Under the pieces are notes generated by a model. The model saw nothing but the letters and a program-made list of their open reading frames with translations. It was not told where the DNA came from and ran no database searches. Shown in pieces: positions 4,806-64,000 of a DNA stretch of 64,000 bases (positions within the stretch are counted from its first letter, which is position 1; every line of letters begins with the position of its first letter). This stretch comes from Macrostomum lignano (taxonomy: Eukaryota): contig NIVC01000382.1 of NCBI GenBank assembly GCA_002269645.1, positions 434,001 to 498,000 on the forward strand, read 5' to 3'. The position numbers were made by a program, and so were the translations under genes.

Positions 4806-6796
4806 ATGACAACTCTTTACCAGCAGCAGCAGCAGCTGGCCTGCCTGACCTCACGGGTTTTGGCGGTCACCATCAAGCTCATCACAAGTCAAACAATTTA
4901 CAACTGTGGGGCAATCGAGAATCAATGAACTTGAACTCAATGGTGCTCACTAATATTAAACAGTCGCCATATTTTAAATATGAGCTAGCCGAGGTTAAAA
5001 CTTTTCACGAAGTTGTCGACGCAATTTACTTTAAGGTGAGTTCTGACTCATTAAGTGACTCTTTTGACCTGCAAAATTTTATGCAATCTTGAATATATTA
5101 CGAAGTTTTCACTGCATCAGACAAAGCAGATATCTGAGACTGTCTTGCCAGTCCTGGTCACTAGTCGTGAGCTGTTTGGTATTGGATAAATCATCATTGA
5201 TCTAATCGAGGGTGAGATTTTGCAGGTTTTGAAATTTAATTGTATAAGTACAAAACTGTCCCTAATGAAATATGCGATAGACAGTTGAATTATCAAATAA
5301 TATTGCCACATTTCAGAACACTTGTGAGTACTAAATCTCAGCCTACCATTCAATCTCCCAGCCTACCATTCAATCTCACAGCCTACCATTCAATCTCACA
5401 GCCTACCATTCGATCTCACAGCCTACCATTCAATCTCATTGCCTACCATTCAATCTCATTGCCTACCATTCAATCTAATTGCATACCATTCATTGCCTAC
5501 CATTTAATCTCATTGCCTACCATTCAATCTCACAGCCTACCCTTCAATCTCACTGCCTACCATTCAATCTCACAGCCTACCCTTCAATCTCACTGCCTAC
5601 CATTCAATCTCACAGCCTACCATTCAATCTCACAGCCTACCATTCAATCTCACAGCCTACCATTCAATCTCACAGCCTACCATTCAATCTCCCAGTCTAC
5701 CATTTAATCTCCCAGTCTACCCTTCAATCTCACAGCCTACCATTCAATCTCACAGCCTACCATTCAATCTCCCAGTCTACCATTTAATCTCCCAGTCTAC
5801 CATTCAATCTCACAGCCTACCATTCAATCTCACAGCCTACCATTCAATCTCACAGCCTACCATTCAATCTCCCAGTCTACCATTTAATCTCCCAGTCTAC
5901 CATTCAATCTCACAGCCTACCATTCAATCTCACAGCCTACCCTTCAATCTCCCAGCCTACCATTTAATCTCCCAGTCTACCATTCAATCTCACAGCCTAC
6001 CATTCAATCTCACAGCCTACCCTTCAATCTCACAGCCTACCATTCAATCTCACAGCCTACCATTCAATCTCACAGCCTACCATTCAATCTCACAGCCTAC
6101 CATTCAATCTCCCAGTCTACCATTTAATCTCCCAGTCTACCATTCAATCTCACAGCCTACCATTCAATCTCACAGCCTACCATTCAATCTCATTGCCTAC
6201 CATTCAATCTCACAGCCTACCATTCAATCCCACACCTAACTATTCTACATCTCATTTAGAACGTCTCCATTCCAATTTAACTGGTGCCGATCGGTTTTTA
6301 TTGTTTTTCAATAAGCCGTCACGTAAGCAACTACAAGATTTTGCCTCCAACCCCCATCTCCGGCTTTCCCAGGTGTCCCACCTGGAGCCCTGGGAGCGCG
6401 GTACTCGCCGAACCACCGGCCTAAGCGGCTCCAGCGGCGGCGGCCTCCAAGTTCGAGGCGTCGGTGCCGGCGGCGTGGTGAGCACCGCCTACTGCCTGCT
6501 GTACAAGCTGTTCACCCTGCGGCTGAATAGGAAGCAGCTGCAGACTCTGCTGGACCATCCGGACTCGCCTTTCATTCGCGCTCTGGGATTCATGTACATC
6601 CGCTACTGCTTGGATCCCAAAGAGCTCTGGGAGTGGTACGAGCCCTATTTTGACGACGCTGAGGTGAGTGTTGGTGAGTTGACTGGCACCGGTTTGCTGT
6701 TTTCACTTATTCCTTTTGTGTAATGCATAATTGTGCGTGTTTTTATATGCTGTTTTATCCTTTCGACTCATCTGAGCAGACAGACGCATACTTACT

Positions 6797-6843
<47 letters not shown>

Positions 6844-6844
6844 G

Positions 6845-6887
<43 letters not shown>

Positions 6888-6888
6888 G

Positions 6889-6923
<35 letters not shown>

Positions 6924-6924
6924 G

Positions 6925-6959
<35 letters not shown>

Positions 6960-6960
6960 G

Positions 6961-7001
<41 letters not shown>

Positions 7002-7038
7002 GTCTATCTATCTATCTATCTGTCTATCTATCTATCTG

Positions 7039-7101
<63 letters not shown>

Positions 7102-7138
7102 GTCTATCTATCTATCTATCTGTCTATCTATCTATCTG

Positions 7139-7169
<31 letters not shown>

Positions 7170-7261
7170 GTCTATCTATCTATCTATCTGTCTATCTATC
7201 TATCTGTCTATCTATCTATCTATCTATCTATCTGTCTATCTATCTATCTGTCTATCTATCT

Positions 7262-7338
<77 letters not shown>

Positions 7339-8598
7339 ATCTCTCTGTCTATCCACAGGAGCTGGACGTGAAGGCCGGGGGCGGCTGCCTCATCACCATC
7401 GGTGAGATGCTGCGCCAGTTCCTCACCCAGCTAGACTGGTATTCCACTCTGTTCCCGCGCATCCCGGTGCCAATCGAGAAAGACATCCGGGCTAAACTGC
7501 AGGACAGAGCCGCGCAGCTGCAGAGACAGCGCGGCAGGGAGGAGGACGGCCCCGCACGAGCGGCTGTCAAAATGAGCGACAGGTTCGCGAGAATCGGATT
7601 GCCTGCTGGTTCTGTGCAGCTAATTTTTATAGGCCGAGATGTACGAAAGAAGGGATTTAGGTTAAGGTAGCGAAGAAATCGGTGATTAAGGTAGCGATGA
7701 AAGGAGAGAGCTGCAGGTAGAGAATGAAGGAAGGGATACATGTAGAGAATGAAGGGAGAGATGTAGGTAGAGAATGAAGGGAGAAATACAGGTAGAGAAT
7801 GAAGGGAGAAATGCAGGTAGAGAATGAAAAGAGAGCTGCAGGTAGAGAATGAAGGAAGAAATGCATGTAGAGAATGAAGGGAGAGATGTAGGTAGAGAAT
7901 GAAGGGAGAAATGCAGGTAGAGAATGAAAAGAGAGCTGCAGGTAGAGAATGAAGGAAGAAATACATGTAGAGAATGAAGGGAGAGATGTAGGTAGAGAAT
8001 GAAGGGAGAAATGCAGGTAGAGAATGAAGACAGAGATGCAGGTAGAGTGAAGAGAGATGCAGGTAGAGAATGAAAAGAGAGAGATGCAGGCAGAGATGCA
8101 GATGGAGAATGAAAGGAGAGAGATGCAGGTAGAGAATGAAGAGAGTTGCAGGTAGAGAATGAAGAGAGAGATGCAGATGGAGAATGAAAATAGAGAGATG
8201 CAGGCAGAGAGTGAAGAGAGATGTTAGGAGAGAATACTGGTCAATCAATCCCTGTTTATCACCAATATTGCAGATCGAGATCCAGATCCCGTCTTAGATC
8301 GCATTCCCGGGATCGGGACCGCGAGCAGCGTCACAGCAAGTCGTGCGATTCTCGAGACCGTGACCGGGCACGTGATCGAGACCGTGATCGGGACCGTGAT
8401 CGTGATCGAGACCGTGATCGGGACCGTGATCGTGACCGTGACCATGATCGGGACCGTGACCGTGATCGGGACCGTGACCGACACCGGGACAGAGACCGGG
8501 ATCGCGACCGGGATAGAGAGGACAGGCATCGAAAGCACAGCAGCAACAAAGAGCATCATCGGCATCGAGACAAAGACCGTGACAGGCGGGATAGATGA
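4806..8598 (+). CDS. PRPF38B: Pre-mRNA-splicing factor 38B (PRP38 domain plus RD/RS-rich tail); 5' start unresolved
   Basis: Exons 4806-5035, 6373-6663, 7359-7582, 8274-8598, with GT-AG and consistent phases (0,0,2). Translation KSNNLQLWGNRESMNLNSMVLTNIKQSPYFK / VSHLEPWERG...VSTAYCLLYKLFTLRL...SPFIRALGFMYIRY / ELDVKAGGG...LFPRIPVP matches the PRP38B family. The last exon is RD-dipeptide rich. AATAAA near 8916. Confidence 0.95.
5335..6240 (+). repeat. 20-nt minisatellite (cattcaatctcacagcctac)n in a PRPF38B intron
   Basis: Exact 20-nt periodicity is visible, with variant units such as cccagtctac. Confidence 0.95.
6795..7350 (+). repeat. Compound microsatellite (TCTG)n grading into (TCTA)n, running up to the 3' splice site
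   Basis: Direct reading; the array ends ~8 nt before the acceptor AG at 7357-7358. Confidence 0.95.
7695..8225 (+). repeat. ~25-nt purine-rich minisatellite (gcaggtagagaatgaagggagaaat)n in a PRPF38B intron
   Basis: About 20 degenerate tandem units. Confidence 0.9.
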
Positions 8599-10718: not shown

Positions 10719-17242
<6,524 letters not shown>

Positions 17243-17769
17243 GTCTGCTGCTTGAGCAATCCTACAGCTCCTAGGGAGGGGTCGAAGCATCCGAAGCCCC
17301 CTTTTATAGAATCTTTTATCGCTTAAGTCAGCGCAGTTTGCCAATTAAGGCTCTATCAAAGCCCGGATCGCGAGCGTGACACAACGAATGTTGAAGAACA
17401 CGCACGACAAAGACAACTAATTGATTGTAGGATAGTTCTAATTACTGGAACTGATAATACAGCGAATTTATAGGAAATTTACAATGCCAAAGTTTGTTTG
17501 AGATTGCCATGATAGAACTAATTGCTTTAATAATCAAAAGCGGGTGAAAGAGTTTGTGTTCCAGTGCCGCTCTCTCAAAAAAGGAAAATATGTTTATTCC
17601 CTAATTAACGCTTTGAAAATGGCACAGCACCCGCAACCCCGCCCTTGGAAAAAACGACTCACATTAACGAGCATCGAACGACAACTGAATCATTAAAACT
17701 GATGCAATTTTACACATACTGGGACTCTTTCATGGACCCACGAAGGTCGTGCAAATTGCATGACTTAGC

Positions 17770-18665
17770 ATCTAACTAAGCATCTAGCTAAGCATCTAGC
17801 TAAGCATCTAGCTAAGCATCTAGCTAAGCATCTAGCTAAGCATCTAGCTAAGCATCTAGCTAAGCATCTAGCTATGCATCTAGCTAGGCATCCAGCTAAG
17901 CATCTAGCTAAGCATCTAGCTAAGCATCTAGCTAAGCATCTAGCTAAGCATCTAGCTAAGCATCTAGCTAAGCATCTAGCTAAGCATCTAGCTAAGCATC
18001 TAGCTAAGCATCTAGCTATGCATCTAGCTAGGCATCCAGCTAAGCATCTAGCTAAGCATCTAGCTAAGCATCTAGCTAAGCATCTAGCTAAGCATCTAGC
18101 TAAGCATCTAGCTAAGCATCTAGCTAAGCATCTAGCTAAGCATCTAGCTAAGCATCTAGCTAAGCATCTAGCTAAGCATCTAGCTAAGCATCTAGCTAAG
18201 CATCTAGCTAAGCATCTAGCTAAGCATCTAGCTAAGCATCTAGCTATGCATCTAGCTAAGCATCTAGCTATGCATCTAGCTAAGCATCTAGCTAAGCATC
18301 TAGCTAAGCATCTAGCTAAGCATCCAGCTAAGCATCTAGCTAAGCATCTAGCTAAGCATCTAGCTATGCATCTAGCTAAGCATCTAGCTAAGCATCTAGC
18401 TAAGCATCTAGCTATGCATCTAGCTAAGCATCTAGCTAAGCATCTAGCTAAGCATCTAGCTAAGCATCTAGCTAAGCATCTAGCTAAGCATCTAGCTAAG
18501 CATCTAGCTAAGCATCTAGCTAAGCATCTAGCTAAGCATCTAGCTAAGCATCTAGCTAGGCATCTAGCTAGGCATCCAGCTAAGCATCTAGCTAGGCATC
18601 TAGCTAGGCATCCAGCTAAGCATCTAGCTAGGCATCCAGCTAAGCATCTAGCTAAGCATCTAGCT
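17770..18665. repeat. 12-nt minisatellite (catctagctaag)n, ~75 copies
   Basis: Exact 12-nt period; lies between the SLC7 stop codon and the guanylyl cyclase 5' end. Confidence 0.97.
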
Positions 18666-18692
18666 AATTTACTTAGCAGTAATAATCGGCTT

Positions 18693-25773
<7,081 letters not shown>

Positions 25774-26089: not shown

Positions 26090-26615
<526 letters not shown>

Positions 26616-31427: not shown

Positions 31428-32070
31428 GTGTGTCCATGAAGAGACTGGGGTGTCCATGAAGAGACTGGGGTGTCCATGAAGAGACCAGGTGTCCATGAAG
31501 AGACTGGGGTGTCCATGAAGAGACCAGGTGTCCATGAAGAGACTGGGGTGTCCATGAAGAGACTGGGGTGTCCATGAAGAGACTGGGGTGTCCATGAAGA
31601 GACCAGGTGTCCATGAAGAGACCAGGTGTCCATGAAGAGACCAGGTGTCCATGAAGAGACCAGGTGTCCATGAAGAGACCAGGTGTCCATGAAGAGACCA
31701 GGTGTCCATGAAGAGACCAGGTGTCCATGAAGAGACCAGGTGTCCATGAAGAGACCAGGTGTCCATGAAGAGACCCATGAAGAGACTGGGGTGTCCATGA
31801 AGAGACTGGGGTGTCCATGAAGAGACCAGGTGTCCATGAAGAGACCAGGTGTCCATGAAGAGACCAGGTGTCCATGAAGAGACCAGGTGTCCATGAAGAG
31901 ACCAGGTGTCCATGAAGAGACCAGGTGTCCATGAAGAGACCAGGTGTCCATGAAGAGACCAGGTGTCCATGAAGAGACCAGGTGTCCATGAAGAGACCAG
32001 GTGTCCATGAAGAGACCAGGTGTCCATGAAGAGACCAGGTGTCCATGAAGAGACCAGGTGTCCATGAAGA
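31428..32070. repeat. 19/20-nt minisatellite (gagaccaggtgtccatgaa / gagactggggtgtccatgaa)n
   Basis: Direct reading; two interspersed unit variants. Confidence 0.95.
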
Positions 32071-32160
32071 AACCCTTAGGGTTGCGGCCCTCCTCCAATT
32101 AAAATTCCTCCGTACGCCACTGACGCCATAGCGCTCAGCCTAAGCCCCTCACTCAGTTCG

Positions 32161-32948: not shown

Positions 32949-55211
<22,263 letters not shown>

Positions 55212-57323
55212 CTAAGTTCCGTCCTTATTATTTTCTATTCTGCAAGGCAAGAAGCGTAAGCAAAAGCGGATTTATACTGAGGCGCTATGCTAGAACAGGC
55301 TTATTGTTTTTTTAGTGTAGTTCTTCCTTCAAATCCAAGAAATTCTGTTGTAGCCGACTTCCTGAGTGTAATAAAAAGCAAGTATCTGTGTTTTTTGGGG
55401 GTGTGTGACGGTGAGGTTCGATGACCAGGGTCTAACTAGCCAGGTAGAGTATAAATGAAGATGCATCAGAACTGGAACTTCCAGGTATTCCATTTATTCA
55501 CCTGCACACTGGCCCCCAATCAGACGATCCCCTCTTCTAGCCCATAGCAACATACGAGCTAGAATAGGCTGAGTGGTGGAGAACGCGTGTCTTTAACCAA
55601 CATCGCATTCCTCGCGGCGAAGATAAAAAATGAAGCTAGCCCAGGGATGAGGGGTGCCCAGCTTCTCGCTCTGACACCCTCTCTATCCTGTCCGAAGTGG
55701 AATGCCTCAAGCGATCGGGTGCCAAGGCGTAGCATTTTGTTAGTGCATACAGGGTGATACCGCTATAGCAACAATTTAACGCAACAAAAATAAAGGTACC
55801 GCCGTCTTCTGCTGCAGTTTAAAGCTGCCGGCTCATCAATGAATAAAACGGACAGGAAAAGTAGTAATAGGGGGATGGGAGCCAGTGAGTGCCCCTTGCA
55901 GCTTCAGTTGCAGTTTACAGCGACATTTCGACATTGCACTGGGGCTAGTTCTACGACAAAAGCCTGCGAGAGGTGAAACGGCGAGGCCCATTTTACGACT
56001 TGGATTTGGCCTGCTGCCTAATGCGACAGGCCTGCCTGATAAAGAGGTTGGACACTGCAGCGAGAGAGCGGGAAGTGCTTAATTCTTTGGTTAGTTGCCA
56101 TACTGTTCTGCAATAAGGATGCCACAATCTGCGAGGTCTCTGCCAGTGAGAAAATGTCATATTCCTCGGAGGTTGGATAAAGTTCATAGCGGCTCGGTGC
56201 GAAATCGGTTCGGGATTAGCTTGATTCTGACAAAAGTGACAATAGCTATGTCGGAATCAAACGGGGGGCTCATCCAAAATACCGTAGGTCCCTTATTGTT
56301 GCAGCGACTAATTTTTTGTCCTGATTTGATCTGATTTGGCATCAGACATTACCAACTCAGTTTGCTATGCTTTACTGCGAGCTAGACATTTACTGCTAAG
56401 TAAAAAACTTAACAAGAGCAACAAAGTGTTTAGGTGTCAATTTCCACCTGGACACAAATGGAATCGGAGCACAATTTTCAATAATCTTAACGAACCTTAC
56501 CTAAAAAAGCAGATGAAATCGAGCCAGAAAAATTTCTGCTTTCCAAGAATCTTCAATTTCTCTCCGATGAAAAGAAATTCAACGCTTCTTATAGCGGCAA
56601 CTATTAGCAAGGAACTGCTAGAATGAAAAGGTTGCTATGCTTCTGATTATTCTCCGTCCCTCCCTTCTCGAGCTCTTAGTCTCTGGGGAGAGCAGAAGAG
56701 AGGCCGATCAGAGAAATCGAAAAACCACCGCAAAGTTTGCCTTCTAGAAGAAGAATTTGGTGAGCGAAATTTCTGAAAATTGCTGTCCTTCCCCTGGCCC
56801 TGTCAGCATCGGCGCAGTCTAGATAAGAGGGCCGGGGGCCTGGGGCTCAGGTAGCATTTGGTCGCCGCGAGTTCCGCTAACAGCGGGCCCAGGTAGGGCG
56901 GTGAAGGGGTGGATTGGATTCCAAACAGCCGAGTGGCCATTGGCGGCCCGTTGACGCGTATTAAGCAGGAACCCGCTGGAAGTTGGCACGAGAGGGATAA
57001 ATTGGAGAAATGCCCGTTTTAGATAGGGGAATTAGGAATTAGGATCAGAGGAAAATTGCCAGACTTTTTTATCCTCGCTCGATAATTAGAAATGGTACGA
57101 AACTGAGGTTGGCGATTTTGCACCTCTTTGAAACGGAATGCATGGGGAGTGTTCGTTGCAATCGGATATCCCCTGCGCCCGATATTTTGCCTTAGCTACC
57201 TCACTTTTCCATCTTTCTCCCTTGCCTGCCTGATAGGCGCTCGTATTCTTGCAAACCGCTTGCTAGCATGTGTGCACCATGGCGCACTTTAAGCGACATT
57301 GTCGCACAACTACAGAGAGGCAC

Positions 57324-57591
57324 TACTGCCCATTCCTCCGACTCCCCTGAGCAGGCACACAAGCGCGCGGATACGTACGCAGTTATACGCACAGTCACAC
57401 GCTCACACAGGAGTGTACAGCGCGGCCCTAGCTTTATTTATCGTTAGGCATGTACACTTCACTGTCTCTTTGGGAGTTGGCCCTAAAGACCCTTAGCTCG
57501 TAATTGCACGAGCAGAGCCAAGCCGAGATTCCAGTTTAACCCAAAATGAATGCGAATGCACTTGAAATCGAGCCTGGATCGCTGGCACATA
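57324..57591 (-). mobile_element. SINE family B copy
   Basis: Co-linear with 50011-50205 and contains the middle segment seen at 39120 and 25035. Confidence 0.75.
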
Positions 57592-59458
57592 AATTTCAAA
57601 CTTCCAACTATAGTTCATTAACTCACCTGAGATGACGTGATCCGAACATTTCGTATGTTTAATCATGGTGGCGAATTAGCTAAATTTTTGTTTCTATAAA
57701 TGATATTCAATTATTTTAAATGGTGCTACTCATTGTACTGTGTTACGAGTATGTTCTAAAGCCTTTGGTCATGTTTTCGTACAAACATGAAGCAAACATT
57801 CGTTTTTCGATTTGCCCGTATAAATAAAAATTATGTTTTGCACTACAGCCTTAGGGATGTCCTATCGATGACTTTTTGCGTCAAATTTCGCGGCGCATGA
57901 TTGTGAAATTTTCTGTGATGTCATCGGCTATGATACCGTGTCCATCATCAATGGAATCGAATTAACATCGAAACTAACAAAGAATGTTCTATAAATTCAT
58001 TAGACCTTTAAAAAAATTCATAACTCGTAAAGTTTTAGTGATCTATTTTCAAAAAAAAAGTTTCTTAAAATGATTTTTGAAATTTTTGTGAAAAGTTTTT
58101 ACTGCTTGAATCAGAAAAGTGGTTTCAATGGCTTAAAGTTACCTCTCCGAATTCATTGTCTAGAGCTTCCTGAACTCGGTGATAGAAAGGCGCAATTTTT
58201 TGGAGCGTAAATCACCTGTAGGCCGCTGTAAGACGCATGGGTGCTTTGTCTATCGCGTCGGTAAGTCAAGAAAGATTGGGAAACGCAGGATGCTGTACTT
58301 GTTGACAAGCTGTGTGGATCAGGGTATGCAGGGCTGCAGAATAGCCCGAATGTTAAGCGAACGTTTCACACTTATCTTGTCTGATGGAGTATTGCGTCGA
58401 TTCTTGCTAGGACCGACACGTATCTTAAACCTCAGTAGCTCAGCCACTCTCCTAGTCACACCTTGTCTTTCAGCCACCCTTTGGTTAGTAGTCCGCCAGT
58501 CCAGTTACCCCTTTTCACTGTTCAGTCACTCTCGAGTCACTCCTTGTCCCTTTCATTCACTGCCAGTTTCAATTCACTCACACAGAAAGTTTCTGCCACT
58601 CACTGTTTGGTTGCCATTATCCCGTCACTGACAAGACATTGTCTCCTCATTATGTGATCCCATAGTCACCGTTTCCACTTCCCCTTCCCACCGGCACTAG
58701 AAAAAGTTCATTCAAGGCAACAAGGAGGGAGCTGCCTAAATGCTAATTAGTTCCGCCCCAGAGGCAGTATGAAACTCTGTACGTGGCTCCCTTTCAGATC
58801 CTTGCCAACTGTCAGGATCATGAAGCCGCAAAATCAGTTCTCTGACCCGCAGAAACCCGGCACCATTGCAGTTTGGCTCTACTTTGTTTTACAACCGAAT
58901 GGAGAATGCACTTAGCGAAGGTATTGCCATGCCCCAAAGTTCTCTAATGAGGTAGAAAATGGCTGCATGTTAGGCCGCCTCTCCGAGCTGAGGGTTCAAG
59001 GTTGAAAAAGTCACTATGTATTTATTAATTGCAACTGCACTGGCCTTCGCTATTTAGCAGTAAAAGGCACCCCTTCTAAAAAGAGTTAATATAATCGCCT
59101 ATCATGAAATTAGGCAACCTTCTAAAAAATAATGCACATTCCAAAAAAGATTAGTTTTCTGCTAAATAAAAGATGAATACATTTTAAAAGAAACATGACT
59201 CCTTTTAGTAGTTGCGAAATCGTTTTGTCTTCGTGAGTTGAAACAGATCCCAGAGGTACTAAATTAAGCCTAGAGTCTGTTCCATTTCTTAACCTGCTTC
59301 TGCAACATTAAGTACATTTAGTACATCTAGAAAACTGTATAAAAATAATAAATAGGAAAGCGTTCCACAACTGATGACCCGCCTTCAGCGACATCGTCCC
59401 CCACAACCAGAGGTGAGGAATGTCTACCTATTCCACTGACTCCTGAGCATGTACCAGC

Positions 59459-59461
59459 GCC

Positions 59462-59531
<70 letters not shown>

Positions 59532-59880
59532 GAATACGCAGTTTGCGTCACAGGGCGCGCTTCAAGGCCAGGTCGCAAATGAACGCCACGCCGCCGGCCG
59601 AATCCGGGGCGCCGGCGTCAGCCAGCAGGCAGTCGACGAAACGCCGAGTGCGCGCCTACCCCCGCCGGCAGCGTTAGCAGCAGCACCTCCTGCACCGGCT
59701 CTGGGCAGTACGACCCGGCGCGGATGATGTGGCCTGCCAGATGGAGTCACCGACGGCGCAACAGGTCGCTTGGACGGACCAGGCCGGCGCGGTGATGCAA
59801 AGCCGCATAGGTCACTCGCTTGTAGCCGATCTTGAAGGCGGCGCGCCGCGTAGCAATATGCTGGCGCGTAGCGTAGCGCC
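59459..59880 (-). mobile_element. 5'-truncated non-LTR retrotransposon (RTE-like) 3' remnant followed by a (TTG)n tract
   Basis: The minus strand translates RAAFKIGYKRVTYAALHHRAGLVRPSDLLRRR*LHLAGHIIR, like the RTE ORF2 C-terminal RRRLRWAGHVxR motif. It has one CGA>TGA stop and one frameshift, and (TTG)n at 59531-59459 follows the ORF end. Confidence 0.65.
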
Positions 59881-60795
59881 AGGATATTGTAAACAGCTCA
59901 GGCACGCACTTATACACACACTGACACAGGAAAGAACTGAATTTTATTCCATTCCAATAGAATACCTAACTAACTTCCTTTCTTTATGAATCAGGATCTC
60001 TACTGTCTACTAGCAGTAGTAAGCGTACGTGTATATAATCACTTTTCTTTGCAACCGTACTTTGCTCCTTACTCTCGTAGCTATCGGTTACATGTAAGTA
60101 GTAGTTCGTTGGAAGGCTTTTGAGCTGGGCACTTTAGGCGATTTATTAATAAGCTTTAGTACTCATGAAAACCTTCGATTTCTTAGGAAAAGTCAGTTAC
60201 GGACATCAGTTTTTCAATTGCACGAATTTCTATAAAGTAGCTATTAGAAAGTTGTGCTCATTTTGATGCGTTAAGCTATCATCATTGGAAATGGAGCTAT
60301 TGGTAAGAATGCCAGGCAGTGTGCAGACATTTTTTCTCACTACAATTGTATCAGTGATTGATTCCAGCACCTCCATTTCTGCTTTGCTGCTCCAGCACAA
60401 CAGCTTTTTTGCATTGAAAATGCACATGCAGTACAAGAAGAATGTACAATCAGAGTTTGCGCGGAAGCCTTTCCCTCTGTCGTTCTCTTTTGCTCTCTCT
60501 CTCTCTCCTCTCTCTTCTTTCCACCGTTGTGTACACGTGCACTGTCAGGGATAAGCACAGGCGTGATATATATGTAGAATATTGGTGGGTGCGCGATACA
60601 GAACTTCTTTCTCACATCTTGGCTGGGCTCTGGGCTTCGTCCCGCCATCTCTCCACGCCGCGGCCGTGGGGTGAGCCGTACCCTCTCACCCTTTGCTAGC
60701 TACGCAGCTATTGTGGCTGTACGCAGCACTCGATCGCATGTCCTGCGCGTACGATAACAACATATTCTAGCCTTCCTCTGCGTCTGCTGTCTAGT

Positions 60796-60799
<4 letters not shown>

Positions 60800-60874
<75 letters not shown>
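60800..60874. repeat. (CT)n microsatellite
   Basis: Direct reading. Confidence 0.95.
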
Positions 60875-60878
<4 letters not shown>

Positions 60879-62673
60879 CCACTGTCGATCTTTTCTCTCT
60901 TTTTCTGTCATACTACTCTCAACCCGACTGTGTACGCTCAAAACATGCGCACAGACTATCTATCCATTACTAACCAACATGTTCTTCACCTATTCGCTTC
61001 TTTCCGTCTCTCCTATTCCGAGCCCAATTCTGCTAGCGGAAAGTCTTCTAACAAATTTCAGGCTCCTTCAATGCCTAAAAGTGAAATCTGGTATAAACTA
61101 CTCCAATTGGTTAGAGGTTTGGCGGTGTGGCTTTAGTGACAGTTCAAGTGCAAACAGACACTTAATGAGACCATCTAGCCATTCTTCATAGTACTTATAG
61201 AATGCGAGAAGTAGGGTCTAACACTTTCCAGGGAGTTTCCAGTTTCCAGTGAGCTAGGTCAAAACAATGAGAAAGAAAAAGAATGCGTCACTACATGTAT
61301 TATGAGCACTCCCAAATAAACCTTTCTTATTCCAGCTGAAATGGTGCGAAAAGATGCTCCCCGCTCTGTCTCGCTCTCGATACTCTCTCTCACCTTTCTT
61401 TCCACCTCTCTTTTCCTCCGTCGTACCCTTCTTCCATTCCTGAACAACTGCCGCCCTCATATTCCGAGAAACGCCCCAACTGAAGCGCAAGGGTCCCCCC
61501 CCGCCCAGGAAGTTAAGCGTACTGCCGAGGGGTGTACTTCTCCAAAGGAGGGACCAGTGTTCTGACCCTTTCCGCACTCTTTCTGCCTCTCACTATATTC
61601 TATTTCCACCTTGCCTCACCCGGATTGAAGGCCATACAAACCGTTATTGGGTCACTCTTCCTCCTCGGTGAGTACATTCATTCGGACTGCGCGTCCAGTT
61701 CACAAAAGCTTAGCATCGGCACAGGATAGAGAGACCCGTAGGAAACCACCTCCGTCTCCTAGGAGGACGGGAACTTGGGCCGCGCAGTGCCAACCAACAG
61801 CGAACAGTCATGTTCCAAGTTTAATACACACACACGGCGCGCTTGCGCACAAAATCCGTGCCAACCTCACCCAGGGGCCAACCAACGCGATAGCAGAACG
61901 CCCTCTCTGTCTCCCCCTCTCTCTTTCTCTTTCTCTCGCCGGCCCCCACATGCAGGCGCCCGCCCCATTTCCCTTGAAAAATGGCCTTCCCTAGCCCAAA
62001 ATTTGCAGCCACATTGGGCGCACGCGCGCACTCTGCCTCTTCTACTGTCCAGCCAAAAACGGCATCGCTCACTCACCCCCGTCTGCACATGCACGCGACA
62101 ACAGCTTGTGTGTGTGGTGTGTGTGTGTATGTCTTAGCGAGTGTGCCCTTGGCTTAAAGGGTGCCTCACTCTCCGTCCCTTCCCATTCTTTCTCTCCACT
62201 TGCCCCCTCCCCTCTAGCCTTCTCGCGTACCAACAAACTGGCCAGACCCCCCTCCTCTCTACCTTCTCCCCCAAGCTTTGCAGCAGCTCCGCCGTGTCCT
62301 GGCCTCTCCCTCCTCCGCCTCCCCCGATCGCACACGCGCGCACGCACCTACTCCTCCTGGCTGGTCCCCGCCCTCAAGGCCTGTCTCTTCACCGTCCCCG
62401 TTTCTAAAGTCGAGTTCCACTCTACCAACTATATCCCTCACAAAAAGGCTCCGTGCAGCGCAGAGCTACCGCATGAAGCATAAGGAGAGAAACTGGAGGC
62501 TGACACTGTCATGAACTCGACGATTCTGTGAAATTTTTGGATTTAGCTATACGTTTGGAGTCAAAAGAACTGAATTTGATTTTGTACGCATCAGCAGCGT
62601 ATGCCTCAGTTCTGCTAAGGCTTATCACTTCTAGACTGAATTGACCCCGTCTCAGTTCCATCGTGGAATAGTA

Positions 62674-64000
62674 ATGGAAACAGACGTTATCAAGCGTGAT
62701 CCGATTTTTTCGACGAGCACAAATCAAATAACTTCGTCTTCTCCGCTCGAACAGTCCGATCTACCAAAGCTAGATTCAGACTCTACGACTTCTGCTGCTG
62801 TGCCAACATCGTATTTGCCTGCAGTTGATCGGAAACAGAAAAAGCAAATGCCGCCTGTACAAGACCGAAAACGCGATCTTTCGCCACAGGTATGCAATTG
62901 TCTACCCGAGGCCATGGTCTCGACCGACTCTCCGCCAGCCTATCGCCATCTTGGCGCTGCGTCTACTGTCCAAGAGCTGCGTTGCCGCCTAGAAACCAGT
63001 CTCTGCCTGCAGCCTGCATCGCTGCGTATTGAAACTGTGATGCCAAGTGAGCGCGAGGGGGCCACGGAGAGAGGCTGCCCTGCAGCTAAATGGGTGCTAC
63101 GTCGAACCGGTGAACAAGAGAAGTTTCTAGCCCTGGTCAGAGTTCGCCAGGGTCACGCATGCCCACAGCCGTAATCGTTGTTGCTTTGGTTAGCTGGGAG
63201 GGCCTCCCCAGAGAATTAGCTGATCGCGCATTCGATTATTTATCCGGCGAGCTCCCACACCAGGGCATCCCAATCGAACGTCGGTGCGCTGCAAACGAGA
63301 GCCGCACCTGCGGTTGCCAAGGATTCGATGATGCCACCTGCGGCGCTTCTTATAGCTTCGGCTGCTCATGGAGTATGTTTCATAACGCCTGTAAGTTCGC
63401 TCGCACCCGAGAGCAGGCCAGAAAGTTTCGCCTACGCTCGCTGGACGCCGAAACTGAATTGGCCTGCAGACTTAACTGTCTCGCTGACGTAGCTGGCCGA
63501 GTGCTCGAAGCCGCAGCGCCCGAGGCTTTTCAAGCGCAAGTGCAGGACTCGCAGCTGGCCGCCGACTGCCGTCTCGGCTGCAATGCGCCGCCAGATAAGC
63601 GACCGTTTAGCGGAGTTACAGCCTGCATTGACTTCTGCATGCACGCGCATAAGGACACGTTCGCACTAGACGGAGGCTGCAACGTGGTGGTGACTCTCAC
63701 CTCCAGTCGATCGACTGACGAGCAGCTGCACGTGCTGCCGGGATACATGCCCGGCGAAGTGGACGAATTCGGCTCAGAGGTCGGCCAGCGCGAGAGAATA
63801 ACTAATGGTGCCATCCAAGAACTACGACATGTCAACTTGGTGACACGGGTTCGCGGATCTCCGATGGCCCCCTGCGCTGTTAGAAAGAAGATAAAGAAGT
63901 CGGCACAGCAGCAAGTACAGCAGAAGCCACAGCAGGGTGCACAGAAGCAACTTCACAACCAGAAGGCTGGAAAAGCTGTCACGTCTAAGGAAGAGCATTC
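62674..64000 (+). CDS. TET: TET-family methylcytosine dioxygenase (Cys-rich region plus start of the DSBH domain); runs off the window end; apparent 1-nt frameshift at ~63163
   Basis: Frame 1: CNC...AYRHLGAA...LRIE...GCPAAKWVLRR...EKFLALVRVRQGHAC. After a 1-nt shift the frame is open to 64000: TAVIVVALVSWEGLP...RRCAANESRTCGCQG...CGASYSFGCSWSMFHNACKFAR...RPFSGVTACIDFCMHAHKD...DEQLHVLPGY...VDEFGS. These match hallmark TET motifs, including the Fe(II)-binding HxD at 63648-63656. Confidence 0.93.

What the first reader, a model, noticed from the sequence alone, without database searches (positions are those of the whole stretch)
62674..64000. Compact, intronless TET dioxygenase missed by the ORF track
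The Cys-rich zinc-binding region and first DSBH half, including HxD (HAHKD), are clearly TET. They are encoded without introns, whereas vertebrate TETs split this region over many exons, and follow only ~70 N-terminal residues with no CXXC domain visible. This suggests a minimal or retroposed TET. A single missing C at 63162-63164 (TGC CC ACA) gives a premature TAA at 63172; the rest is intact, so a homopolymer error is likely. If the host is a flatworm, where 5mC machinery is reduced in several lineages, the substrate (DNA 5mC, RNA 5mC or 6mA) is an open question.
Basis: partly seen in the sequence, partly recalled or inferred. Interest (0 to 1): 0.7.

Follow-up and report, generated by a model that had tools for sequence, protein, structure and literature searches.

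The report
Compact flatworm TET with altered active site
The window holds the first half of a real, short, single-exon TET gene of the flatworm Macrostomum lignano; its frameshift is most likely an assembly artefact, but the protein lacks two residues that all other TET enzymes use to bind their co-substrate and 5-methylcytosine.

Summary
Window 62674-64000 encodes a TET Cys-rich domain and the first DSBH half, HxD included. The match to human TET2 is colinear (E 7e-86) and is broken by one missing base at 63161-63164.

The window is Macrostomum lignano assembly Mlig_3_7, contig NIVC01000382.1. Reading on in that contig gives a 930-codon, single-exon, CXXC-less TET that ends at window-equivalent 65465. 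Two more near-identical copies exist in the same assembly. One is fully intact (930 aa). The other has its own 1-nt deletion elsewhere.

Both deletions sit exactly on sites where the other two copies differ C versus T (chance about 4e-6). That points to consensus dropout among duplicated copies of a PacBio assembly, not decay.

The 5mC-contacting Asn (TET2 N1387) is Ala. The 2-oxoglutarate-binding Arg (R1896, the "Rx5a" signature) is Ser. Y1902 is Phe. Each change is unique among about 150-200 TET cluster representatives and is present in every copy. The Fe(II) triad, R1261, H1416, S1898 and the conserved Zn-site Cys/His are kept.

The gene is a TET by descent, but canonical 5mC oxidation is doubtful. 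No retroposition hallmarks were found.

The parts
62674..63162 (+). CDS segment 1 (frame of 62674): codons 1-163. These are a 73-residue low-complexity N-terminus and then the start of the Cys-rich domain (CNC at 62893).
   Evidence: Translation. The TET2 alignment starts at residue 74. Identical to residues 1-163 of the intact paralogue P0287 and of P0150. The codon-usage score is positive only in this frame.
63160..63167 (+). Frameshift site: TGC CC- ACA, one base short (codon 164). Sister copies read TGC CCC ACA (Pro) and TGC CTC ACA (Leu).
   Evidence: In 62600-64000 this is the only difference from copy B. The three-way CDS alignment shows -/C/T at this column.
63159..63161 (+). Internal ATG, out of frame with codons 1-163. 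The public annotation of this contig uses it as the start of a 768-aa product (P0286).
   Evidence: P0286 starts MPTAVIVV. Gene position L004:10001 equals window 63159.
63162..64000 (+). CDS segment 2 (frame of 63162): codons 164-442. It holds the rest of the Cys-rich domain, the first DSBH half and the start of the Q/P-rich insert. The CDS continues beyond the window to window-equivalent 65465.
   Evidence: Translation. Pfam Tet_JBP. 100% identical to P0150 residues 164-442. The continuation was read in L004.
63279..63284 (+). Arg203-Arg204, equivalents of TET2 R1261/R1262. R1261 binds the C1 carboxylate of 2-oxoglutarate. Both are kept.
   Evidence: Alignments. Role taken from PMC7854593.
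63642..63656 (+). HAHKD: the HxD Fe(II) ligands His326 and Asp328 (TET2 H1382, D1384). Both are kept.
63657..63683 (+). Divergent substrate loop TFALDGGCN. Phe330 stands for TET2 H1386, Ala331 (GCA 63663-63665) for N1387 and Asn337 for T1393.
   Evidence: Ungapped alignment to TET2. Ala at this position occurs only in the three M. lignano copies among 208 TET representatives: N 201, D 4, A 3. N1387 hydrogen-bonds N4 of 5mC, and substitutions cut mC oxidation 10-40 fold or more (PMC11804724).
63894..64000 (+). Start of the low-complexity insert (about 385 residues, 24% Gln and 18% Pro). It splits the DSBH as in other TETs.
   Evidence: The AlphaFold model has pLDDT below 50 over about residues 386-833.
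62638..62673 (+). In-frame TGA (62638-40) and 33 nt of leader before the ATG. That AG is unverified and lacks the T-rich tract of this genome's acceptors.
   Evidence: The transcript-based annotations of copies B and C also start at METDV.

Best explanation
This is the 5' 1.3 kb of a real TET-family gene of the flatworm Macrostomum lignano. The full gene is one coding exon of 930 codons. It has a short disordered N-terminus, a TET2-type Cys-rich zinc domain, DSBH half 1, a Q/P-rich insert of about 385 residues, DSBH half 2 and a Lys/Glu-rich tail. It has no CXXC. At least three near-identical copies exist in the redundant Mlig_3_7 assembly. These points are shown.

The missing base in the window's copy is most likely a consensus artefact. 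It was probably made where reads from copies carrying C (Pro164) and T (Leu164) were mixed. This is inferred, at about 0.8.

The likely working of the protein is also inferred. It should still fold like TET2, bind zinc and Fe(II), and engage DNA and a flipped base. But it has lost the Arg that holds the C5 carboxylate of 2-oxoglutarate (Ser870). It has also lost the Asn that reads N4 of 5-methylcytosine (Ala331). So ordinary 2-oxoglutarate-driven 5mC-to-5hmC oxidation is probably weak or absent. The protein then serves either as a poor or altered-specificity oxidase or in a non-catalytic chromatin role.
For: TET identity. The fold search hits only TET2 structures (E 7e-28).

Source and continuation: P0150, P0286 and P0287 are all on GCA_002269645.1. 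L004 is 100% identical to window 53159-64000. NIVC is M. lignano Mlig_3_7: PacBio reads, Canu assembly, Pilon polish, with 180 Mb of duplicated blocks at least 95% identical.

Single exon: the 2,793-nt CDS is contiguous in copy C, and one base short in copies A and B. The C-terminal DSBH half lies directly downstream.

Artefact: the three CDS copies differ at only 8 columns. Both deletions fall on columns where the other two copies differ C/T: -/C/T at codon 164 and C/-/T at codon 773. The chance of that is about (4/2793)x(7/2793) = 3.6e-6. Similar three-state indels occur in the flanks.

Pocket: Ala for N1387, Ser for R1896 and Phe for Y1902 are each unique to M. lignano among 208 or 147 representatives. 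R1261 and R1896 are the two strictly conserved 2-OG-binding arginines (PMC7854593). TET2 R1896S is used as a catalytic-dead control (PMC10406918). N1387 substitutions, Ala included, depress mC oxidation (PMC11804724).

Constraint: all invariant Cys/His columns, HxD, the distal His, and the R1261, H1416, S1898 and H1904 equivalents are retained. A 930-codon ORF is open.
Against: No reads were available, so a real 1-nt deletion in this copy cannot be excluded. The same window carries more than 3,200 twitchin codons with no frameshift, so the assembly is not generally indel-ridden.

Loss of activity is inferred from residues only. A compensating basic residue or another co-substrate is possible. 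The AlphaFold model is of low confidence exactly at the active-site loop (residues 325-335, pLDDT below 50).

Expression is only implied by the transcript-based annotation. dN/dS among the copies (4 nonsynonymous to 4 synonymous changes, about 0.36) is not significant.
Confidence: 0.7

Rival explanations
1. The frameshift is real. The window's copy is a recently disabled duplicate, a young pseudogene, among redundant TET copies of the partly polyploid DV1 line. At least one other copy stays intact.
For: Redundant copies exist. The deletion survived Pilon polishing with DNA and RNA reads. Other long ORFs in the window are clean. Copy B also carries a single-base deletion.
Against: Apart from the one base, this copy is identical to copy B over 1.4 kb. 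Both deletions coincide with C/T variant columns (P about 4e-6), which real independent deletions would not do. Multi-copy regions are where short-read polishing fails.
Confidence: 0.17
2. The whole gene family is a decaying relic: a catalytically dead TET on its way out in a lineage with little 5mC. It has no remaining function.
For: Two otherwise near-universal pocket residues are lost, plus Y1902F, H1386F and T1393N. It is among the more divergent TETs at conserved columns, deviating at 13% of columns that are at least 90% conserved. M. lignano is reported to have only low 5mC. No flatworm TET appeared among the homologues retrieved.
Against: A 930-codon ORF is open. This includes a 385-residue insert in which frameshifts would be easy. 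All conserved Zn and Fe ligands and several 2-OG and DNA contacts are retained. The divergence is no greater than in the mite, sponge or Nematostella TETs. Gene models in this assembly are transcript-based.
Confidence: 0.2
3. The gene is a processed retrogene, a reverse-transcribed copy of an intron-containing parental TET. This would explain the single exon and the short N-terminus.
For: The CDS has no intron, whereas M. lignano genes average 4.9 introns. TETs of other animals are multi-exon: the honeybee gene spans more than 150 kb with many exons.
Against: There is no poly(A) remnant and no flanking direct repeat. No parental copy was seen. The same window has a 6.1-kb twitchin exon and a 670-codon single ORF, so large exons and intron loss are common here. 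This rival concerns origin only and is compatible with the best explanation.
Confidence: 0.25
4. The shift is decoded by programmed -1 ribosomal frameshifting or by transcriptional slippage.
For: A -1 slip after CCA would give exactly GHAC-P-TAV.
Against: There is no X_XXY_YYZ slippery heptamer. Two sister copies are simply in frame at this site.
Confidence: 0.01

Closest known systems
Human TET2 catalytic domain (PDB 4NM6) and bilaterian TETs in general
   Same: The Cys-rich domain and the split DSBH are colinear, at 43-55% identity in the core. The HxD...H triad and the R1261, H1416, S1898, T1372, W1291, M1293 and H1904 equivalents are present. A low-complexity insert sits at the same place. 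There is no CXXC, as in TET2 and, per PMC11292947, in annelids and many other invertebrates.
   Different: It is 930 aa, against about 1,300-2,400 aa for the nearest homologues. The coding sequence is a single exon. Only 73 residues lie N-terminal to the Cys-rich domain. N1387 is Ala, R1896 is Ser, Y1902 is Phe, H1386 is Phe and T1393 is Asn.
Chlamydomonas CMD1, a TET homologue that uses vitamin C instead of 2-oxoglutarate
   Same: It is a TET/JBP-fold enzyme that keeps the Fe(II) triad but lacks a functional basic residue for the C5 carboxylate of 2-OG. It has Phe at the stacking position (PMC7854593).
   Different: CMD1 is algal and has no metazoan Cys-rich domain. It keeps an acidic or amide residue (Asp350) to read N4 of 5mC, where the flatworm protein has Ala. 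No biochemical data exist for the flatworm protein. The resemblance is a lead, not a test.
Leukaemia-derived TET2 pocket mutants (R1896S, N1387 variants)
   Same: The same positions are changed. R1896S is used as a catalytic-dead control. N1387 variants lose mC oxidation, and some gain thymine oxidation.
   Different: Those are somatic single mutations in an otherwise canonical enzyme. Here the changes are germline, combined, shared by all copies, and accompanied by T1393N and H1386F in the same loop. In hTET2, N1387A itself did not gain thymine activity.
Short single-ORF TETs from metagenome contigs (P0043, 703 aa, ENA ERZ27289012)
   Same: Compact and CXXC-less. Both DSBH halves lie in one uninterrupted ORF. 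They share the EGLPRELADRA motif.
   Different: Only about 45% identical. They have canonical Asn and Arg (HAHKDTNNM, PHRIGLVFYQHK). The organism is unknown, and so is whether the contig is DNA or RNA.

Membership tests
TET/JBP dioxygenases (Pfam Tet_JBP; metazoan TET subfamily) | Significant match to the Tet_JBP oxygenase domain and to solved TET2 | tested here: met
   Pfam PF12851 at 6.2e-24, 84.5 bits against a cut-off of 34.9. PDB TET2 at E 7.4e-86. Foldseek hits TET2 only, E 7e-28.
TET/JBP dioxygenases (metazoan TET subfamily) | Cys-rich zinc-binding domain directly N-terminal to the DSBH, with conserved Cys/His | tested here: met
   All invariant and at-least-90%-conserved Cys/His columns are retained: C135, H161, C163, C205, C213, C215, C231, C240, C299, C322, H324.
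TET/JBP dioxygenases | HxD Fe(II) motif | tested here: met
   H326-K-D328, window 63648-63656.
TET/JBP dioxygenases | Distal Fe(II) His (Hxs motif) in DSBH half 2 | tested here: met
   H854-A-T in the continuation of the same contig (L004) and in all copies. It lies outside the window.
TET/JBP dioxygenases | 2-oxoglutarate recognition signature Rx5a (TET2 R1896...Y1902) | tested here: not met
   S870-M-S-L-V-F-F876 in place of R-I-S-L-V-F-Y. R occurs in 145 of 147 representatives, and S only in M. lignano. The signature is as defined in PMC4150289. The role of R1896 is from PMC7854593.
TET/JBP dioxygenases | Second 2-OG arginine (TET2 R1261) and the H1416/S1898 contacts | tested here: met
   R203, H353 and S872 are aligned without gaps.
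5-methylcytosine-specific TET | Asn or Asp that hydrogen-bonds N4 of 5mC (TET2 N1387, NgTET1 D234) | tested here: not met
   Ala331 (GCA 63663-63665). The distribution is N 201, D 4, A 3, and the three Ala are the M. lignano copies. Role from PMC11804724.
5-methylcytosine-specific TET | Stacking aromatic and His that reads N3 (TET2 Y1902, H1904) | tested here: met
   F876, a conservative change that is also Phe in NgTET1 and CMD1, and H878.
TET (architecture) | Low-complexity insert splitting the DSBH | tested here: met
   About residues 415-800, Q/P-rich, predicted disordered.
TET (architecture) | N-terminal CXXC zinc finger (optional; absent in TET2 and many invertebrates) | tested here: not met
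   No CXXC pattern in any frame of the 64-kb window. The annotated products start at METDV.
TET (function) | 2-OG/Fe(II)-dependent oxidation of 5mC to 5hmC | not testable with these tools
   Needs an enzyme assay or LC-MS.
Processed retrogene | Intronless CDS, a poly(A) remnant, target-site duplications, and an intron-bearing parent elsewhere | tested here: inconclusive
   The intronless CDS is met. A poly(A) remnant and flanking repeats were not found. A parent gene cannot be searched in this genome with the tools given.

The most novel reading that the evidence does not exclude
A bilaterian TET has been kept as an open 930-codon gene in several copies. It retains its iron and zinc sites but has given up both the 2-oxoglutarate C5-carboxylate arginine and the asparagine that reads N4 of 5mC. 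It would then be a naturally re-tooled TET. It could use another co-substrate, as algal CMD1 does with ascorbate. It could use another substrate: thymine, RNA 5mC or 6mA. Or it could be a dedicated non-catalytic 'pseudo-TET' in an animal with DNMT1/3 but very little 5mC.
Probability: 0.25. Interest if true: 0.75.

Novelty: new variant of a known kind. Interest (0 to 1): 0.45.

Why it matters
TET enzymes are the only known erasers of animal DNA methylation, and their pocket residues are almost invariant from sponges to mammals. Here a TET in a transgenic, RNAi-tractable regenerating flatworm carries germline equivalents of residue changes known from leukaemia mutants (R1896S, N1387 variants). 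That would allow a direct test of what a TET does without canonical 2-oxoglutarate and 5mC recognition, and of how methylation machinery decays or is re-purposed in flatworms.

There is also a practical point. Frameshifts in Mlig_3_7 gene models can be consensus dropouts at variant sites between duplicated copies. The public 768-aa and 836-aa products of this gene are truncated for that reason.

Tried and rejected
- An intron or programmed frameshift as the cause of the frame change. Rejected: the spacing to TET2 is exact minus one base, there is no slippery site, and the sister copies are in frame.
- Upstream coding or CXXC exons. No CXXC pattern occurs in six frames of the window. No upstream open frame between 52.3 and 62.7 kb has coding-like codon usage.
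- The prokaryote-type promoter/terminator scan is irrelevant for this eukaryote.
- Rfam found nothing in the window.
- The first homologue search returned nothing above about 49% identity and did not show the source genome's own proteins. The exhaustive representative search did.
- Taxon assignment from twitchin was inconclusive: rotifer and flatworm hits at about 45-50%.
- The Wasik et al. 2015 genome paper was not held. No paper in the library discusses the M. lignano TET.
- The AlphaFold model used 27 sequences and has mean pLDDT 50.7. The core scores 70-90, but the active-site loop scores below 50. It confirmed the fold and could not show whether another basic residue replaces R1896.
- dN/dS among the three copies rests on too few differences.

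Full report
**1. What is in the window**

From the ATG at 62674, frame 1 reads 163 codons (METDV...RQGHAC) and then runs into PQP and a TAA at 63172. From 63162, the frame shifted by +2 reads PTAVIVVALVSWEG... without a stop to the end of the window. Joined, the two pieces align colinearly with the crystallised human TET2 catalytic domain (4nm6 residues 8-353, E 7.4e-86). The downstream piece passes Pfam Tet_JBP (6e-24). The HxD motif (HAHKD) lies at 63642-63656.

At the junction the sequence is TGC CC ACA. TET2 has C-x-x-A-V-I-V at the same spacing, so exactly one base is missing and there is no room for an intron.

**2. Context and controls inside the window**

The window is metazoan. It carries a twitchin/unc-22-like giant gene on the minus strand (open frames of 2,044, 650 and 558 codons, with a protein kinase domain). 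It also carries a ubiquitin-domain gene, PRP38, a NIT-domain gene, an amino-acid permease and many satellites.

The twitchin gene shows what introns look like here: 70-95 nt, GT..AG, with a T-rich tract and a TTTCAG or TTTTAG acceptor. None occurs in the TET region.

No CXXC-type zinc-finger pattern exists in any frame of the 64 kb. None of the open frames in the 10.3 kb between the upstream plus-strand gene (which ends at 52336) and the ATG has coding-like codon usage. The 73 N-terminal codons do.

**3. Where the window comes from, and the rest of the gene**

A word-indexed homologue search found only TETs at 49% identity or less. The exhaustive representative search found P0150 (836 aa), 100% identical to the downstream piece. 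P0150 lies on GCA_002269645.1 contig NIVC01005213.1. Its 90% cluster has two more members on other contigs of the same assembly: P0286 (768 aa) and P0287 (930 aa).

NIVC00000000 is Macrostomum lignano Mlig_3_7. It is a PacBio/Canu assembly of the DV1 line, polished with Pilon. It has 180 Mb of duplicated blocks at least 95% identical, because DV1 carries extra large chromosomes. The paper gives an average of 4.9 introns per gene and reports 38.8% of genes as trans-spliced (PMC5730564).

Locus L004 (NIVC01000382.1) is 100% identical to window 53159-64000. So the window is that contig, at about 434,001-498,000. Its annotated product, P0286, starts at the out-of-frame ATG at 63159 (MPTAVIVV...). 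The first 163 codons are therefore missing from the public protein.

Reading on in L004, the CDS ends at window-equivalent 65465. It is 2,792 nt, which is 930 codons plus the stop codon, one base short (2,793 nt in the intact copy). It is contiguous, with the second DSBH half directly downstream of a Q/P-rich insert of about 385 residues.

**4. The frameshift**

The three CDS copies are A (the window), B (L003) and C (L005, intact, 930 aa). They differ at only eight columns: four synonymous, two plain nonsynonymous, and two columns that carry the two single-base deletions.

At codon 164 the copies read -/C/T (deletion, Pro, Leu). At codon 773 they read C/-/T. Each deletion therefore falls exactly where the other two copies differ by a C/T transition. 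Independent real deletions would do this with probability of about (4/2793) x (7/2793) = 3.6e-6.

A consensus step that sees a mixture of C and T reads from near-identical copies, and drops the column, explains the pattern directly. Two more such three-state indels lie in the flanks. Over 62600-64000 the window and copy B differ by nothing else. Further upstream they differ by about 2%.

I therefore rate an assembly artefact at about 0.8. The caveat is that the window's other long ORFs are clean and no reads could be examined.

**5.

The catalytic pocket is not canonical. In the window, HAHKD is followed by TFAL, where TET2 has LHNM. The N1387 equivalent is Ala331 (63663-63665), H1386 is Phe and T1393 is Asn. 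Downstream, TET2's HPTRISLVFYQHK reads HPTSMSLVFFQHK, so R1896 is Ser870 and Y1902 is Phe876. H1881, S1898 and H1904 are kept.

A motif census was run over the TET cluster representatives retrieved here:

| TET2 position | Sequences with the motif | Distribution |
|---|---|---|
| N1387 | 208 | N 201, D 4, A 3 (the three M. lignano copies) |
| R1896 | 147 | R 145, S 2 (both M. lignano) |
| Y1902 | 147 | Y 145, F 2 (both M. lignano) |

According to PMC7854593, R1261 and R1896 are the two strictly conserved arginines that hold the C1 and C5 carboxylates of 2-oxoglutarate. CMD1 lacks a functional C5 partner, cannot use 2-oxoglutarate and uses vitamin C instead. TET2 R1896S serves as a catalytic-dead control. 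N1387 hydrogen-bonds N4 of 5mC, and its substitution lowers mC oxidation 10-40 fold or more. Some substitutions shift activity to thymine, though N1387A in human TET2 does not, while the equivalent D234A in NgTET1 does. T1393 normally constrains the N1387 amide (PMC11804724). The family signature 'Rx5a' (PMC4150289) is thus not met.

**6. Is it decaying?**

Overall divergence is high but within the range of working TETs. It deviates at 13% of columns that are at least 90% conserved, like the mite, sponge and P0053 sequences. Mean core identity is 49%, like Nematostella and the sponge. All conserved Cys/His columns, the Fe triad and several 2-OG and DNA contacts are retained. A 930-codon ORF remains open through a long repetitive insert.

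The AlphaFold model has a confident TET2-like core (pLDDT 70-90) that matches only TET2 structures (E 7e-28). It is uncertain at the 325-335 loop.

The pattern is selective loss of two pocket residues with everything else preserved. That argues for a retained but altered or non-catalytic role rather than free decay. This is inference.

**7. Architecture claims**

'Compact' holds. The protein is 930 aa, against 1,300-2,400 aa for the ten nearest named homologues. These come from insects, spiders, Limulus, scallop, amphioxus and coelacanth, all at about 50% identity.

'CXXC-less' is ordinary. Annelid TETs, many other invertebrate TETs and TET2 lack it (PMC11292947).

'Intronless' holds for the CDS. 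It is notable against 4.9 introns per gene, but very large exons are common in this window.

'Retroposed' is unsupported. There is no poly(A) remnant and no flanking duplication, and a parental gene could not be searched for.

**8. Biological setting**

This part comes from the literature. M. lignano is reported to keep DNMT1 and DNMT3 and to have low 5mC, while planarians and schistosomes have lost 5mC (PMC11292947, PMC10658182). No paper in the held library describes its TET. No flatworm TET was among the homologues recovered.

**9. Verdict**

The finding is real and mostly well read. The gene is already in public annotation, truncated in two of its three copies. The frameshift is most likely an artefact, and the compact CXXC-less form is a variant of a known kind. 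The point worth following is the unique loss of the 2-oxoglutarate arginine and the 5mC asparagine in an otherwise conserved, multi-copy TET of a tractable flatworm.

Noticed in passing
window 60858; L004:14269 (window-equivalent 67427); CDS codons 164 and 773: There are four 'three-state' columns (base / other base / deletion) among the three near-identical copies. This suggests that Mlig_3_7 consensus calling drops a base where duplicated copies differ. Other frameshifted gene models in this assembly may have the same cause.
   Followed up: partly
window 33581-47279 (-): A twitchin/unc-22-like giant muscle protein gene (I-set, fn3, protein kinase). It has a single 6.1-kb open exon of 2,044 codons and short 70-95 nt GT..AG introns around the kinase domain. 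The public model (3,853 aa) is drawn as reaching to about window 55175.
   Followed up: partly
window 49517-52336 (+): A gene with a ubiquitin-like domain. It has a 670-codon uninterrupted ORF and a 750-aa public product. It is the upstream plus-strand neighbour of the TET gene.
   Followed up: no
window 6193-7670 (+): PRP38-family splicing-factor exons separated by a 540-nt (TCTA)n microsatellite at 6811-7353, which is presumably intronic.
   Followed up: no
window 14369-16459 (-): Two open frames match the NIT (nitrate/nitrite-sensing) domain, which is unusual in animals. (CT)n runs lie next to them.
   Followed up: no
window 18693-22306 (-): Exons of an amino-acid permease (AA_permease_2) are interleaved with long 12-, 26- and 8-nt satellites.
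   Followed up: no
window 5339-6238, 12157-13431, 17767-18667, 19129-20430, 26091-26615, 31430-32074, 53884-54778: The density of micro- and minisatellites is very high. Examples are 1.3 kb of (CTAA)n, a 12-mer x75, a 15-mer x60 and a 20-mer x45. This agrees with the 15% simple and tandem repeats reported for this genome.
   Followed up: no
window 61750-64000 versus 59500-61750: Divergence between copies A and B drops from about 1.9% substitutions to almost none across the TET promoter and CDS. Which copy is the outlier changes along the locus. This suggests gene conversion or recombination among the copies.
   Followed up: partly
L004:20187-22307 (about 10 kb downstream of the TET stop): Downstream neighbours on the minus strand are an F-box gene and a gene with a PCIF1_WW domain, of the cap-adenosine methyltransferase family.
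   Followed up: no
L001:450-2561 (ENA ERZ27289012 contig k119_1344072): A 703-aa CXXC-less TET is encoded as a single ORF on a metagenome contig of unknown organism, with canonical Asn and Arg. It belongs to a divergent group (P0043, P0046, P0053), and P0046 also carries a PWWP domain.
   Followed up: partly
window 61990-62470: A C/T-rich, GC-rich (about 59%) stretch lies just upstream of the TET leader. It is nearly identical in all three copies and may be the promoter or 5' UTR.
   Followed up: no
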